A DNA stretch of 63,902 bases, counting the filler, from Olpidium bornovanus S191 (Eukaryota; Fungi; Olpidiomycota): the NCBI GenBank assembly GCA_017911155.1. It is 27 parts of 27 records of this genome, joined end to end, with 100 filler letters (N's around TTAATTAATTAA, not from the genome) between each part and the next. Parts side by side here need not be neighbours in the genome. Positions count along the whole stretch, not along the records: positions 62,736 to 63,902 come from JAEFCI010008148.1; 26 more parts are not named here. One strand, given 5' to 3'. The translations under genes and the position numbers were made by a program. The notes beneath the pieces are model-generated. The model had not been told where the DNA came from. It ran no database searches and saw only the letters and a list, made by a program, of their open reading frames with translations. Positions within the stretch are counted from its first letter, which is position 1. Each line of letters begins with the position of its first letter. Positions 7,452-63,902 of the stretch are shown in pieces.

Positions 7452-8016
7452 GGGAGGGGGGTTGTTGATTTTGAAGAACGGCAGTGGCCGAAGAAGAACG
7501 AAGGTGCGAAGACGAGGACGGCGCTTAAGCGGGAAGACCGGGAAACTCTTTGTTCGGAGCTGTTCGTAGGCGGCTTCCCGACCTTGAGGAGCTACTTTGT
7601 CAGTCTGGTTTTTTTCACTTTGCCTCGCATTTCGACCTCGAGATTCGTTTCCGCCCTCGCAAACGCGCCTTTTCAGGGTCGTTTTTGCATGATTTTGCAC
7701 CCCTTTAGCCTGGTCCAACCTTGGGCGTCTCCTGCGGCCCCCATTGAGCGCGTGGTGCACCCCTGGCGAGCACTTTTCGCTCGGTCGCCATGGGGGCTGG
7801 TTTCCCANNNNNNNNNNNNNNNNNNNNNNNNNNNNNNNNNNNNNNNNNNNNTTAATTAATTAANNNNNNNNNNNNNNNNNNNNNNNNNNNNNNNNNNNNN
7901 NNNNNNNAAAAAACGGCAGCACGTCCCGTTGCTGCGGAGAGCTCGGTGGTGATGGCTTTTGCTTTACCGGAAGCGATCTTTTAAACACAGAAATGCGCGG
8001 AAAAGCCTCCAGTAGC

Positions 8017-8033
8017 AAAAAAAAAAAAAAAAG

Positions 8034-8123
<90 letters not shown>

Positions 8124-8130
8124 CCCCGGG

Positions 8131-8166
<36 letters not shown>
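8017..8166. repeat. Very long poly-A tract (about 100 A, a CCCCCCGGG break, then about 35 A); length may be inflated by assembly
   Basis: Read directly from the sequence. Confidence 0.8.
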
Positions 8167-8168
<2 letters not shown>

Positions 8169-8952
8169 AAAAGGAAGAGAAAAAGAACAAAAAAAGGGGG
8201 TGGGGGGTGGAAGGGAGAAAGGGGAGGTGGTGCGGAGGAAAGAAAGGAGGGGGGAAAGGGGGAAAGGGGGCGCGTGTGCCTGGCGTGCGATTGGAAATGA
8301 TTGCATTTGGGAAAATCCAAGAAATTTTGCACAAATCCGCACCAATGGCACGCGCACGCACCCCCGCCCTCCTCTCCCTCCCCCCCTTTTCCCCCCCCCC
8401 CACCCCCGCATTTCGCGCTCGTTAAGGGGGGGGGGAGGGGGGGGGAGGTGGGAGCGCTGGGTGCGCGTGCATGCGTGCGGCGCGCTGCGTGCTTTTGCTG
8501 CCGCGCGGAAGTGTGCGGGTGCGGTAGTGGTGCGCGGAGTGAGTGTGCGGCAAACAGATCGTCGGGAAGGGTGAGAGGGAGAGCGGTGGGGCGGGGGACG
8601 GCGCGTGGCCGCGGAAGGAAGACGAGGAAACGCCCGCTCCTCCTAAGCCCGCCGGCTGGCCCTCCCCCCGTCCCCTCTTCCCCGCGCCCTTACTTCTTTC
8701 CCCCCCCCTTTCCTCCTCCGCGTTTGGTTTTTTTTTTTTTTTTTTTTTTTTTTTCTCTTTTTTTTTCTTTTGCTTTTTTCCCCTTTCCCTTCTCCTTCCC
8801 CTTCTCCCCTCCGTCCGCCGCCGCCGCCGCCGCCTCCTCGTCCTCCTCCTTACTCTTCGTCCTTCCTCCTCCTCCTCCCCCTCCTCCTCCTACTTCTCCG
8901 CCTCCTCCTCTTCGCCCCTGCGCTGGCCCGCCCACCCTCTTCCCGCCTAACT

Positions 8953-9657
8953 ATGACCGTCTCCGTTGTCAAGCGCGGGTACGTCTCCGTTAAGGAGGAC
9001 GGGCTGAGATCATGGATATGGAGCAAGCGGTGGCTGCTCCTCCGCGAGCAGACCCTCACCTTCCATAGGAACGAGGTGAGAGGCGTCGAGACTCGGCGGG
9101 AGACGGAGGGAAGGAGGGAGGGAAGTTAAGAGAGGGAGTGAAAGAGAGAGAGAGAAAGAGAGAAAACGAGAGAGAGGAGGGAGGGAAGTTAAGAGAGGGA
9201 GGGAAAGAGAGAGAGAGAAAGAGAGAAAACGAGAGAGAGAAAGAGAGAAAACGAGAGAGAGAAAGAGAGAAAACGAGAGAGAGAAAGAGATAAAGAGAGA
9301 GACAGAGAGAGAGAGATCAAAACTTTATTTTTCGCTCGTTCTCTCGTGTTGTTTCTCCCTTTTTGTCGTCGCCGGTGGCAGCACACCTTCCAGGCCGTGT
9401 CCTTGGTGTTCTTGAAAGATGTCGAGTCCGTCAGCCGAAACGAGCTGCGGCCGTACTGGTGAGTTTCTTTCCCCGCTTCCCTCGCGGCCGTTTACCCGGT
9501 GACCAGCACGGCGCTTCCGCGTCGCCTCCTCCCGCTCTTTCCGCTCCTCCCGCTCTTCCCGCTCTTCCCGCTTTCCTGGCCCCCAGTTCAGCTGATCCGC
9601 TGGTTTTTTTTTGGTTTTGCTTGCCGCTGACCCCGATGGCGAAACTCGCGCCTTCCC

Positions 9658-9688
<31 letters not shown>

Positions 9689-10130
9689 TTTGCCCTCTGT
9701 CAGCTTCGAGCTTGTCACCAAGGATCGAACGTACCAGATATCATGCAAGAGCGACGAGGAGCTTTATTCGTGGATGGACGAGGTTTACCAGCGGTCGCCG
9801 CTCACGGGGGTGTCCAACCCGACGAACTTCGTGCACAACGTCCACGTCGGCTTCGACGCCAACACCGGCACGTTCACCGGCCTGCCTGATCAGTGGAGCA
9901 GCCTGCTGACGCGGTCGAATATCTCCAAGGAGGACTACGCGCGCAACCCCCAGGCCGTTCTGGACGTTCTCGAGTTCTACACCCGGCAAAACAAGGACTC
10001 TTTAATCTCCATGGACAACAAAAACCTCCGCTCCGCCGACGTCGACGGCGCCTCCCTCGCGAGCGTGTCCGGCCTGGGCGACGCGCATTTGCAGGTCCTG
10101 GTCCCGCCGGGTCGAGGTTCCAGCCACGAA
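8953..10130 (+). CDS. CLA4: Cla4/Skm1-type PAK kinase, N-terminal PH and CRIB region, 3'-partial (exons 8953-9075, 9382-9458, 9704-10130)
   Basis: PH: [32 protein letters not shown], then [32 protein letters not shown]: [16 protein letters not shown]. Then [12 protein letters not shown]. The spliced exons stay in frame. Confidence 0.92.
9105..9317 (+). repeat. Purine-rich tandem repeat inside CLA4 intron 1 (two ~63-nt units, then ~22-nt AAAGAGAGAAAACGAGAGAGAG units)
   Basis: GGAGGGAGGGAAGTTAAGAGAGGGAG(T/G)GAAAGAGAG... occurs at about 9113 and 9176. Confidence 0.85.
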
Positions 10131-62735: not shown

Positions 62736-63902
62736 CCGCTCCGGAAACCGCTTCCGAACGTGAATGGCAAAAAAAACCGCCTGTCTAAGGCATTCTGTAA
62801 TTGCACTTCAAACTAACCGCAATTGTGGTTGATGTGCGAAAAGTCCTTGTCGTGCGAGTCCCGCATCAAAAAGATATTTTTCTCCGCGTCGTCGGAAATG
62901 CCCGAGACGTAGCTGCTCAGCCAGGTCGGTGCGCGATTGACGTCGACCTCGCGGTTGTGGATTAAGTTCGGGTCGACGGGCCTCTGGAACAGGACAGTCC
63001 CCTTTGGTATGAAATCGCGAGCGTACTGCTTGAGACCGTCGTCCATCGTGAGATTCCCGAGAGGGGTAAACTGTGCGGAGCGGCGCGCGGGAATGTAAAA
63101 GTGGTCTAACGCGGGGCTCGTCTGCGGGGCCGCCGCCGTCGCGGGATACCGCGGAGGTCCGACGCGCAAACTCGATCCGACAGAGCGGGCCGCGCGGACG
63201 AGCTCGAAGAGCGCGCGGAAGAACTCGTCGGGCACCGCCTCGAAGTTGAAGTTCACGAAAGTCGCCACCGCGTACCGGTGCTGCGGGAAGGCGTGCACGG
63301 CCACGTGCCCGGACGAGAGCGCGGCGTACGCGATTACCTCGGTGGCGGCCGCGGGATCTGAGCTCCTCCCTTGGCGGTCCTCGCCGGGTCTGTTTGCCGC
63401 CAAGCGCCGCACGAGGTCTGGGCCGTGGTTGGTCAGGTTCACGTGCGCGTCAGAATTTTCCGTTGCGACCGACACGACGGTCGCGTGGGCGCGCCCGGCG
63501 GCCTCCACGACGGCTTTCCGCAGGCGCTCCGGACGGGACAGCACGTCTGTTTCGCAGCCGAAAAACTCCCGCTGCACCGTGGAACCCCGCAGGACCGGAT
63601 CGGAGAGCCAGTCGATGGAAGCGTGAGAGTACGGCGCGTACGATTTGAGCGCTCCGGACCACGACGCCGCCGCCTCCTCGTCCGTGTGCCTGGCGAGCAA
63701 GTTGCGGAGCCAGGACGGGAGGTTAAACATGCTGAGATGCGTGTGGCCGTCGTAATGCTCGAGTTTCTCGGTGGTCCTCCGGTCGCGCGTCAGTTCCACG
63801 TAGTCGGGCGAAAGGTTCCGCGGGTCCACGATGCCGCCGCTGTCGTACATGACGTGGAAACCCACGAGCTGCGAGATCGACTGCACAAACGCGGAATACA
63901 GG
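62736..63902 (-). CDS. Tri-domain fusion: aminopropyltransferase C-terminus, degenerate bacterial-type AdoMet decarboxylase domain, SET domain; partial at both ends
   Basis: One frame, open from the window edge to 62813. APT: LYSAFVQSI..GF and KLEHYDGHTHLSMFNLPSWLRNLL. AdoMetDC-like: EFFGCETDVL..PERLRKAVVEAA..ATVV and ALSSGHVAVHAFPQHRYA. SET: QYARDFIPKGT and HINHNC, followed by a GTTAGT donor. Confidence 0.75.

What the first reader, a model, noticed from the sequence alone, without database searches (positions are those of the whole stretch)
63158..63589. The AdoMetDC-like domain lacks its self-cleavage site (ESH replaced by SGH) and carries an insertion
Seen: the segment aligning to the bacterial consensus L-x-E-S-H-I-S-I-H-T-W-P-E reads L-S-S-G-H-V-A-V-H-A-F-P-Q (SSGH at 63316-63305). 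About 35 extra residues precede it. Established: AdoMetDC needs autocleavage at Glu-Ser to form its pyruvoyl cofactor. Inference: this is a pseudoenzyme that may act as a scaffold, polyamine-binding or regulatory module. The protein would then take dcSAM from elsewhere, which favours a transfer/methylation role over self-contained synthesis.
Basis: partly seen in the sequence, partly recalled or inferred. Interest (0 to 1): 0.7.

Follow-up and report, generated by a model that had tools for sequence, protein, structure and literature searches.

The report
Dead AdoMetDC domain in fungal-type fusion protein
This stretch encodes a well-folded copy of the enzyme S-adenosylmethionine decarboxylase that has lost the serine it needs to make its own cofactor, so it most likely acts as a structural part of a three-domain protein known so far only from zoosporic fungi.

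Summary
The minus-strand reading frame (62816-63901, cut off at its N-terminus by the piece edge) contains a class 1b AdoMetDC-fold domain (residues ~106-247, window 63161-63586). Evidence: Pfam PF02675 E=8e-9; family profile against T. maritima SpeD E=1e-13; AlphaFold model pLDDT 86, TM 0.84-0.87. S-S-G-H sits exactly at 63316-63305. Three independent alignments place Gly198 on the pyruvoyl-forming Ser63 and Phe218 on the position of T. maritima Cys83 (TCG motif). A 34-residue, low-confidence loop precedes the site.

Only 17 relatives exist among 1.84 billion representative proteins, and every named one is a chytrid or blastoclad. They share the architecture membrane anchor, aminopropyltransferase-like, AdoMetDC-like, SET methyltransferase. 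None has Ser at the processing position (Gly in 15 of 17).

In four genomes from two phyla the gene lies head-to-head with an intact AdoMetDC-aminopropyltransferase fusion (E-S-H and T-C-G motifs present). That gives a plausible outside source of dcSAM.

The best reading is a non-catalytic structural or docking module, like the N-terminal domain of animal spermine synthase. It is a new variant of a known kind. The role is inferred, not shown.

The parts
62816..63901 (-). Open reading frame of 362 codons, N-terminus cut by the piece edge. It is probably one exon of a eukaryotic gene encoding aminopropyltransferase-like tail, AdoMetDC-like domain and the first half of a SET domain.
   Evidence: Homologous over its full length to P0001 (41% identity, E=1e-76) and 16 other proteins. 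GC 64%, GC3 83%.
63617..63901 (-). C-terminal tail of the aminopropyltransferase-like (spermidine-synthase-fold) domain, residues 1-95, including the conserved H-Y-D-G-x-T-H motif at 63737-63757.
   Evidence: Aligns with the end of the Spermine_synth region of the homologs. Weak direct match to the C-terminus of spermidine synthase 1mjf.
63161..63586 (-). Class 1b AdoMetDC-fold domain (residues 106-247), catalytically degenerate.
   Evidence: PF02675 E=8e-9. Family profile against T. maritima SpeD E=9.5e-14. AlphaFold pLDDT 86 and Foldseek TM 0.84-0.87 to 1tlu/1tmi/1vr7.
63554..63571 (-). R-E-F-F-G-C, the first beta-strand motif. It is the best conserved sequence block of the domain and corresponds to A-E-F-Y-E-C of T. 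maritima.
   Evidence: Column counts: R 14/17, E/D 17/17, G 15/17, C 14/17.
63341..63451 (-). Inserted loop (residues ~151-187), 34 residues longer than in T. maritima. Low model confidence with one short helix. It opens with a conserved N-L-T sequon (63431-63439).
   Evidence: Loop length varies from 10 to 65 residues in the family. N in 12/17 and T/S in 14/17 at the sequon.
63305..63316 (-). S-S-G-H at the turn where canonical enzymes have S-E-S-H. Gly198 replaces the pyruvoyl-forming serine.
   Evidence: In the model S196-S197 form the turn between two strands and G198 starts the next strand.
63248..63250 (-). Phe218 at the position of T. maritima Cys83 (T-C-G motif), which I take to be the active-site cysteine.
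   Evidence: Ungapped alignment. The family column holds F/W/Y/R/V/S and never C. The need for an active-site cysteine in decarboxylation is stated in PMC10407285.
62816..63037 (-). N-terminal half of a SET methyltransferase domain (G-L-K-Q-Y-A...I-P-K-G-T-V-L-F ... N-H-N-C). It ends one residue after the N-H-x-C motif.
   Evidence: Aligned with the Pfam-positive SET domains of the homologs. Pfam does not call SET on this half alone.
62812..62818 (-). G|GTTAGT, a probable phase-1 splice donor overlapping the in-frame TAG. The retained G would start the Asp codon that homologs have here (N-H-N-C-D-P-N).
   Evidence: Read from the sequence. GC falls from 64% to 48% at this point. Homologs continue for ~100 more residues. 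This is an inference; the acceptor is outside the piece.

Best explanation
The region encodes a folded class 1b S-adenosylmethionine decarboxylase domain that has become a pseudoenzyme. The serine that would be converted to the pyruvoyl cofactor is a glycine. The position of T. maritima Cys83 (the active-site cysteine by my own recollection) is a phenylalanine. A variable surface loop has been inserted just before the former cleavage site.

The domain sits between an aminopropyltransferase-like domain and a SET methyltransferase domain. The protein belongs to a rare family found so far only in zoosporic fungi (Chytridiomycota and Blastocladiomycota), whose complete members start with a single hydrophobic anchor.

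Class 1b AdoMetDC is, from my own knowledge, an obligate dimer, and the equivalent dead domain of animal spermine synthase is kept because it makes the dimer. I therefore think this domain most likely serves as a dimerisation or docking module. It would hold the protein together, either with itself or with the active AdoMetDC-aminopropyltransferase fusion encoded next door in relatives. Chemistry would be done by the SET domain, giving N-methylation of a polyamine or an aminopropylated or lysine substrate.

Shown: the fold, the loss of the catalytic residues, the family-wide nature of that loss, the domain architecture, and the conserved gene pair in relatives. Inferred: the dimerisation or docking role, the substrate of the SET domain, and the lumenal location.
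For: Fold and homology:
- PF02675 E=8e-9.
- Family profile against T. maritima SpeD E=9.5e-14.
- Model pLDDT 86 with TM 0.84-0.87 to 1tlu/1tmi/1vr7. Human spermine synthase 3c6k is also hit.

Loss of catalytic residues:
- The register is identical.
- The Ser63 column is G 15/17, D 1, A 1. The Cys83 column is never C. The His68 column is H in only 6/17.
- The NCBIfam equivalog score is far below its cut-off.

The domain is maintained rather than decaying:
- High-confidence core in the model.
- Conserved R-E-F-x-G-C, P206 (16/17) and Y210.
- GC3 of 83% across an unbroken 362-codon frame.

Architecture:
- Spermine_synth + AdoMet_dc + SET in the homologs by Pfam.
- SET motifs N-H-x-C, E-L-T-x-D-Y and C-x-C-x4-C are intact in homologs.

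Partner gene:
- In Catenaria, Sorochytrium, Fimicolochytrium and Cladochytrium the gene lies head-to-head with a gene encoding anchor, AdoMetDC (L-S/A-E-S-H ... T-C-G) and aminopropyltransferase (G-G-G-D-G-W, I-D-C-T-D).

Precedent:
- Animal spermine synthase kept a bacterial AdoMetDC-derived domain that lost activity but is essential for dimer formation (PMC12803844).
Against: - No experiment or multimer model here tests dimerisation or docking.
- The window protein has two serines immediately before the glycine. Ser-Ser is, from my own knowledge, a cleavage site in some other pyruvoyl enzymes. His203 (the His68 equivalent) is retained, so lineage-specific processing one residue upstream cannot be formally excluded.
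- Seven of 17 relatives have Gly-Ser one position downstream, a motif I recall being used by other pyruvoyl enzymes.
- The gene pair is shown only in relatives. The 1.2-kb piece gives no context for this gene.
- The frame ends inside the SET domain. If that stop is real rather than an intron, the protein would lack a working methyltransferase.
Confidence: 0.7

Rival explanations
1. Prozyme-like regulator. The dead domain pairs specifically with the live AdoMetDC domain of the divergently encoded AdoMetDC-aminopropyltransferase protein and switches it on or tunes it, as the trypanosomatid prozyme does for its paralog. This is a special case of the docking idea, but with an allosteric function.
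For: - The head-to-head gene pair is conserved across two fungal phyla.
- Both proteins carry an N-terminal hydrophobic anchor.
- The first-strand motif with its acidic residue is the best conserved part of the dead domain.
- The prozyme precedent is described in PMC5201418 and PMC6221367.
Against: - The dead domain is not a recent paralog of the neighbour's domain. HMMER finds no match and hhalign gives only E=1e-4.
- The short-loop paralogs in Spizellomycetales are not paired with such a gene.
- Prozyme is a class 2 fold.
- No interaction data exist.
Confidence: 0.15
2. It is still a pyruvoyl enzyme that processes at a shifted site, with cleavage between Ser196 and Ser197. It would act on SAM or, like the neofunctionalised SpeD homologs, on ornithine or arginine.
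For: - A Ser-Ser pair lies in the turn and His203 is retained.
- SpeD homologs have repeatedly changed substrate (PMC10407285).
Against: - Neither serine is conserved: each is Ser in only 2 of 17 members, and the closest relative has D-Y-G-S.
- The Cys83 position (TCG motif), taken as the active-site cysteine, is Phe.
- A shift of one residue would move the cofactor out of register on the strand.
- The score against the true-enzyme model is far below its cut-off.
Confidence: 0.06
3. Ligand-sensing module. The former active-site pocket still binds SAM, dcSAM or a polyamine and presents it to, or gates, the flanking catalytic domains.
For: - The fold and the first-strand motif are preserved.
- The domain lies between two SAM- or dcSAM-related domains.
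Against: - Pocket residues that could be checked (the Ser63, His68 and Cys83 equivalents) are lost or variable.
- No binding evidence exists.
- The inserted loop adjoins the pocket and is highly variable.
Confidence: 0.07
4. The gene copy in this piece is a decaying pseudogene, truncated by a real stop codon inside the SET domain, so the degenerate site has no functional meaning here.
For: The in-frame TAG comes one residue after N-H-N-C, and about 100 residues of the SET domain are missing from the frame.
Against: - There are 362 codons without a frameshift or stop, homologous throughout.
- GC3 is 83% with an abrupt drop to 48% GC after the stop.
- The stop overlaps a G|GTTAGT donor that would preserve the Asp codon of the homologs.
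- The Ser-to-Gly change is ancestral to the family, not a private lesion.
Confidence: 0.08

Closest known systems
N-terminal domain of animal spermine synthase (human SMS, PDB 3c6k)
   Same: A bacterial class 1b AdoMetDC-derived domain fused to an aminopropyltransferase. It has lost decarboxylase function and is retained for a structural role, dimer formation (PMC12803844). The model of the window domain also hits 3c6k in Foldseek.
   Different: - There the dead domain is N-terminal to an active aminopropyltransferase. Here it follows an aminopropyltransferase-like domain and precedes a SET domain.
- Relatives here carry a membrane anchor.
- The spermine synthase domain has no detectable sequence similarity to AdoMetDC, whereas this one still passes the Pfam threshold.
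Diatom AdoMetDC-aminopropyltransferase fusions, some with a histone-type N-methyltransferase domain (Michael 2011, FEBS Lett 585:2627; known here only through citing papers)
   Same: The same three domain types occur in one polypeptide. They are proposed to make and N-methylate long-chain polyamines (PMC3820600; PMC6356823; bioRxiv 10.1101/2020.11.23.393678).
   Different: - The diatom fusions are described as AdoMetDC followed by aminopropyltransferase and are presumed active. None appeared among the 17 relatives.
- Here the order is aminopropyltransferase-like, dead AdoMetDC, SET, and the lineage is zoosporic fungi.
- I could not read the original paper, so I do not know whether any diatom AdoMetDC domain lacks its serine.
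Bacterial AdoMetDC-spermidine/spermine synthase fusion proteins
   Same: Class 1b AdoMetDC fused to an aminopropyltransferase (PMC12803844). The gene next to the family members in four fungal genomes has this arrangement, with intact motifs.
   Different: Those are active at both domains. The window domain lacks the processing serine and the cysteine.
Degraded second SpeD domain of Victivallis vadensis SpeD1-SpeD2 and the non-processing half of eukaryotic class 2 AdoMetDC
   Same: A class 1b-type domain that lost critical residues, cannot self-cleave, and is kept as part of a larger protein (PMC10407285).
   Different: There the dead domain is fused directly to a live AdoMetDC domain in the same chain. 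Here no live AdoMetDC domain is in the same protein.
Trypanosomatid AdoMetDC prozyme
   Same: A catalytically dead AdoMetDC homolog with a regulatory role through heterodimerisation (PMC5201418, PMC6221367).
   Different: It is a stand-alone class 2 paralog of its partner. Nothing here shows heterodimerisation.

Membership tests
Class 1b AdoMetDC fold / Pfam AdoMet_dc (PF02675) | Sequence match to the family model above the curated threshold | tested here: met
   36.3 bits against a cut-off of 25, E=8e-9. Family profile against T. maritima SpeD E=9.5e-14.
Class 1b AdoMetDC fold / Pfam AdoMet_dc (PF02675) | Alpha/beta sandwich fold superimposable on solved class 1b structures | tested here: met
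   Model pLDDT 86. Foldseek hits 1tmi/1tlu/1vr7/2iii at E 1e-9 to 4e-8, TM 0.78-0.87 normalised to the target.
Functional pyruvoyl-dependent AdoMetDC (or SpeD-derived ornithine/arginine decarboxylase) | Serine at the self-processing site (Glu62-Ser63 in T. maritima) that becomes the pyruvoyl group | tested here: not met
   Gly198 aligns with Ser63 in three independent alignments. There is no Ser in this column in any of 17 family members.
Functional pyruvoyl-dependent AdoMetDC (or SpeD-derived ornithine/arginine decarboxylase) | Active-site cysteine (T-C-G motif, Cys83 in T. maritima) | tested here: not met
   Phe218 occupies this position and the family column is never Cys. The cysteine's role is taken from PMC10407285; the residue number is from my own knowledge of the T. 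maritima structure.
Functional pyruvoyl-dependent AdoMetDC (or SpeD-derived ornithine/arginine decarboxylase) | Score above the NCBIfam equivalog cut-off (TIGR03330) | tested here: not met
   25.7 bits against a cut-off of 75.65.
Functional pyruvoyl-dependent AdoMetDC (or SpeD-derived ornithine/arginine decarboxylase) | Actual autoprocessing and CO2 release | not testable with these tools
   Needs recombinant protein, mass spectrometry and an enzyme assay.
Aminopropyltransferase (spermidine/spermine synthase, PF01564) | Glycine-rich dcSAM loop (G-G-G-D/E-G) and D-x-x-D-P catalytic motif | tested here: inconclusive
   This part of the protein lies outside the piece. In relatives the domain matches PF01564 and T. 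thermophilus SpeE 1uir at E=5e-38. The loop is canonical only in some members, such as P0001 with G-T-G-D-G-G. The second Asp-Pro is missing in all that I inspected.
SET-domain methyltransferase (PF00856) | N-H-x-C SAM-binding motif, E-L-x-F/Y-D-Y catalytic tyrosine motif, post-SET cysteine cluster | tested here: inconclusive
   The window has the N-terminal half and N-H-N-C (62819-62830), but the frame stops there, and Pfam does not call SET on the fragment. Full-length relatives have all three features and pass Pfam.
Zoosporic-fungal family: aminopropyltransferase-like / AdoMetDC-like / SET (unnamed) | Collinear homology across all three regions with Gly at the former processing site | tested here: met
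   P0001 aligns with residues 1-361 at 41% identity, E=1e-76. Sixteen further members were found.

The most novel reading that the evidence does not exclude
Zoosporic fungi carry a conserved two-gene module that works in the secretory pathway. One gene encodes a membrane-anchored active AdoMetDC-aminopropyltransferase. Its divergent neighbour encodes a membrane-anchored protein in which dead copies of the same two enzymes are fused to a live SET domain. The dead AdoMetDC domain would dock onto or regulate the live enzyme.

Together the pair would build and N-methylate unusual polyamines, or polyamine-modified lysines on secreted or cell-wall proteins. That would be a fungal counterpart of the machinery proposed for long-chain polyamines and silaffins in diatoms.
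Probability: 0.15. Interest if true: 0.75.

Novelty: new variant of a known kind. Interest (0 to 1): 0.5.

Why it matters
Dead AdoMetDC domains kept for structural or regulatory work are already known from animal spermine synthase, trypanosome prozyme and the second half of the eukaryotic enzyme. The principle is therefore not new.

What is new is the setting:
- A very small family, 17 representatives among 1.84 billion proteins, in early-diverging fungi.
- The dead domain is sandwiched between an aminopropyltransferase-like domain and a SET methyltransferase.
- The gene is paired across two phyla with an intact AdoMetDC-aminopropyltransferase gene.

None of the 8.3 million papers searched here links these domains with chytrids. 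If the pair makes methylated or long-chain polyamines, it would give a tractable fungal system for a chemistry so far proposed only for diatoms. It would also add a case of how pseudoenzymes are recruited as assembly parts.

Tried and rejected
Searches that found nothing useful:
- Word-indexed protein searches with the fragment, the domain alignment and the full alignment found nothing or only one or two proteins already in hand.
- Only the exhaustive HMMER scan found the family.
- There were no relatives in phage records, PHROGs, IMG/VR contigs, bacterial and archaeal genomes or JGI metagenome contigs.
- The family alignments were too divergent for pattern-based locus searches.
- The exact fragment is not on record, so I could not recover the source contig, its organism or its neighbours.
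- Michael 2011 and Wu 2008 are not held, so what I say about them comes from citing papers and my own knowledge.

Ideas rejected:
- The 34-residue insertion is an unspliced in-frame intron. Rejected because its GC matches the exon and the closest relative carries a similar loop at the same place, on a contig with one uninterrupted 707-codon frame.
- The dead module is a recent tandem copy of the neighbouring active gene. Rejected because it is far closer to bacterial enzymes (134 and 55 bits) than to the neighbour (26 bits and no hit).
- The overlapping plus-strand frames are genes. Rejected because they have no family match and are expected in GC-rich DNA.
- No RNA family, tRNA or repeat lies in the piece.
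Full report
**What is in the piece**

Positions 62736-63902 hold one long reading frame, on the minus strand, from 63901 down to a TAG at 62815-62813. It has 362 codons and runs off the right edge, so the N-terminus is missing. Other frames in the piece are short, have no family match, and are what GC-rich DNA gives by chance. There is no tRNA, Rfam match or repeat. The frame has 64% GC and 83% GC at third positions. The 77 bases after the stop have 48% GC.

**The observation**

Pfam AdoMet_dc matches at E=8e-9, 36.3 bits against a cut-off of 25, in two stretches separated by the insertion. The NCBIfam equivalog for genuine SAM decarboxylase reaches only 25.7 bits against 75.65.

A direct comparison with T. 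maritima SpeD (1tlu) aligns YAALSSGHVAVHAFPQHRYA with [20 protein letters not shown] without gaps. On its own that match is weak (E=0.15), so I built the family.

**The family**

Word-indexed searches found nothing. An exhaustive HMMER scan of 1.84 billion representative proteins found 17 relatives. The best is 41% identical over residues 1-361 (E=1e-76).

Every relative that carries an organism name is a zoosporic fungus:
- Blastocladiomycota: Catenaria anguillulae, Sorochytrium milnesiophthora.
- Chytridiomycota: Fimicolochytrium jonesii, Gaertneriomyces, Thoreauomyces humboldtii, Powellomyces hirtus, Geranomyces variabilis, Cladochytrium replicatum and a Lobulomycetales genome.

No relative turned up in phage, viral, bacterial/archaeal or JGI metagenome collections.

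**Architecture**

Pfam on the full-length relatives gives Spermine_synth, then AdoMet_dc, then SET.

- Members with complete N-termini have one strongly hydrophobic 19-residue segment ahead of the first domain.
- The aminopropyltransferase-like domain matches T. thermophilus SpeE (1uir) at E=5e-38 and thermospermine synthase at E=7e-34.
- Its glycine loop is canonical only in some members. The second Asp-Pro of the D-x-x-D-P motif is absent in those I inspected, and two cysteines that canonical enzymes lack are invariant.
- The SET domain of relatives has N-H-x-C, E-L-T-x-D-Y and a C-x-C-x4-C cluster. It matches BurB, MLL, ASH1L and SETD2 structures.
- The window fragment covers the tail of the first domain, the whole AdoMetDC-like domain and the first half of SET.

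**Register and fold**

A 17-sequence alignment of the AdoMetDC-like domain, used as a profile, hits T. maritima SpeD at E=9.5e-14 and Aquifex SpeD at E=8e-8. The family's conserved glycine falls on Ser63 in an ungapped 58-residue block. hhalign against the intact AdoMetDC of a Sorochytrium gene gives the same register, A-L-S-S-G-H on L-L-S-E-S-H.

An AlphaFold model from that alignment has pLDDT 86 and pTM 0.79. Its best structural matches are the T. maritima enzyme (E~1e-9, TM 0.84-0.87), then Aquifex, then class 2 enzymes, prozyme and human spermine synthase. In the model S196-S197 form the turn between two strands and G198 opens the next strand. This is the place I recall for the cleavage site in the real enzyme.

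**Catalytic residues**

| T. maritima residue | Window residue | Family column (17 members) |
|---|---|---|
| Ser63 (processing serine) | Gly198 | G 15, D 1, A 1 |
| Glu62 | Ser197 | G 11, S 2, others 4 |
| His68 | His203 | H in 6 only |
| Cys83 (TCG motif) | Phe218 | F/W/Y/R/V/S, never C |

The need for the internal serine and for an active-site cysteine is stated in PMC10407285. The T. maritima residue numbers are from my own knowledge.

The first-strand motif R-E-F-x-G-C, Pro206 and Tyr210 are conserved. The domain is therefore under selection as a fold but not as a decarboxylase.

**The insertion**

Between the anchors HATVVS and YAAL there are 47 residues, against 13 in T. maritima. The segment has low confidence in the model apart from a short helix. 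In the family the loop ranges from 10 to 65 residues.

It begins with N-x-T/S in most members (N 12/17, T/S 14/17). This aligns with the G-A/V-S/T-G motif of true enzymes in the Aquifex alignment. With the N-terminal anchor and the invariant cysteine pair, a conserved glycosylation sequon suggests a lumenal or extracellular location. That is an inference.

The loop is not an unspliced intron. It is in frame and compositionally like the exon, and the closest relative carries a similar loop at the same place, on a contig with one uninterrupted 707-codon frame.

**Context in relatives**

The piece gives no context, so I looked at relatives.

- In Catenaria, Sorochytrium, Fimicolochytrium and Cladochytrium the family member lies head-to-head with a gene of a different kind. 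That gene encodes a hydrophobic anchor, a class 1b AdoMetDC with intact L-S/A-E-S-H, H-x-W-P-E and T-C-G motifs, and an aminopropyltransferase with G-G-G-D-G-W and I-D-C-T-D.
- These four genomes span two phyla.
- Two short-loop paralogs in Spizellomycetales are not so paired.
- The dead module is not a recent copy of the neighbour. The family's profiles score 134 and 55 bits on bacterial SpeE and SpeD, but 26 bits and nothing on the neighbour.

**End of the frame**

The TAG falls one residue after N-H-N-C, where relatives continue D-P-N-L for about 100 residues. The sequence there reads TGC G|GTTAGT. This is a usable splice donor that would keep the G of an Asp codon, and GC drops at that point. 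I think this is a phase-1 intron in eukaryotic genomic DNA. The acceptor is not in the piece. Catenaria has no intron at this position.

**How it most likely works**

The domain cannot make a pyruvoyl group at the canonical site, so it is not a decarboxylase. From my own knowledge, class 1b enzymes are dimers. The dead AdoMetDC-derived domain of animal spermine synthase is kept because it forms the dimer and is essential for activity (PMC12803844). I therefore favour a dimerisation or docking role, either with itself or with the live enzyme encoded next door in relatives. The SET domain would do the chemistry.

Rivals are a prozyme-like activator, a ligand sensor, shifted processing at Ser196-Ser197, and a decaying gene copy. 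The shifted-site idea is weak because neither serine is conserved and the cysteine is gone. Only a protein experiment can exclude it.

**Comparison with what is known**

The phenomenon has clear precedents:
- Animal spermine synthase.
- The degraded SpeD2 domain of Victivallis.
- The second half of class 2 AdoMetDC.
- Trypanosomatid prozyme.

The three-domain combination recalls the diatom fusions proposed to make and methylate long-chain polyamines. Those are described as AdoMetDC followed by aminopropyltransferase and did not appear among the relatives. A full-text search joining these domains with chytrids returned nothing relevant.

**Verdict**

This is a new variant of a known kind, of moderate interest.

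Noticed in passing
window 62812-62830 (minus strand): The frame stops one residue after the SET motif N-H-N-C at a TAG that overlaps G|GTTAGT, and GC falls from 64% to 48%. This looks like a phase-1 intron, which implies eukaryotic genomic DNA and that the rest of the SET domain lies outside the piece.
   Followed up: partly
L003 6331-8275, L004 7985-9451, L005 7186-9110, L007 ~7618-9400 (all minus strand, upstream of the family member at 10001): In four fungal genomes from two phyla the family member lies head-to-head with a gene encoding a hydrophobic anchor, an intact class 1b AdoMetDC (E-S-H, T-C-G) and an aminopropyltransferase (G-G-G-D-G-W, I-D-C-T-D). In Cladochytrium the deposited gene model (319 aa) misses the AdoMetDC exon, which six-frame translation shows.
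   Followed up: yes
window 63431-63439; family alignment A2: A conserved N-x-T/S sequon opens the inserted loop (N 12/17, T/S 14/17). It aligns with the G-V/A-S/T-G motif of true enzymes. With the N-terminal hydrophobic segment and two invariant cysteines in the first domain of relatives, it suggests a glycosylated lumenal or extracellular protein.
   Followed up: partly
homologs P0001-P0016, alignment A3: The aminopropyltransferase-like domain of relatives is itself partly degenerate. The second Asp-Pro of D-x-x-D-P is missing and the glycine loop is canonical only in some members. So both polyamine-enzyme modules may be non-catalytic and only SET active.
   Followed up: partly
L004 4756-7395 and 15230-16043: In Sorochytrium the pair is flanked by an OPT-family oligopeptide transporter gene. 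An ornithine decarboxylase antizyme gene (PF02100) lies about 3 kb downstream, so another polyamine-related gene is nearby.
   Followed up: no
L006, L008; proteins P0008, P0009, P0011-P0013, P0016: A Spizellomycetales subgroup has a short loop (10-11 residues). It is not paired with an AdoMetDC-aminopropyltransferase gene where context was seen. Several of its gene models lack a recognisable SET domain. Fimicolochytrium has one gene of each kind.
   Followed up: partly
P0001 SET domain against PDB: The best solved-structure match of the family's SET domain is the bacterial protein BurB (9l4t), ahead of histone methyltransferases. From my own recollection, not checked here, BurB methylates a small molecule. 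That would fit a non-histone substrate.
   Followed up: no
window 62770-62778: A run of nine A on the plus strand (T9 on the coding strand) lies in the AT-richer stretch after the stop. This is consistent with intron or untranslated sequence.
   Followed up: no
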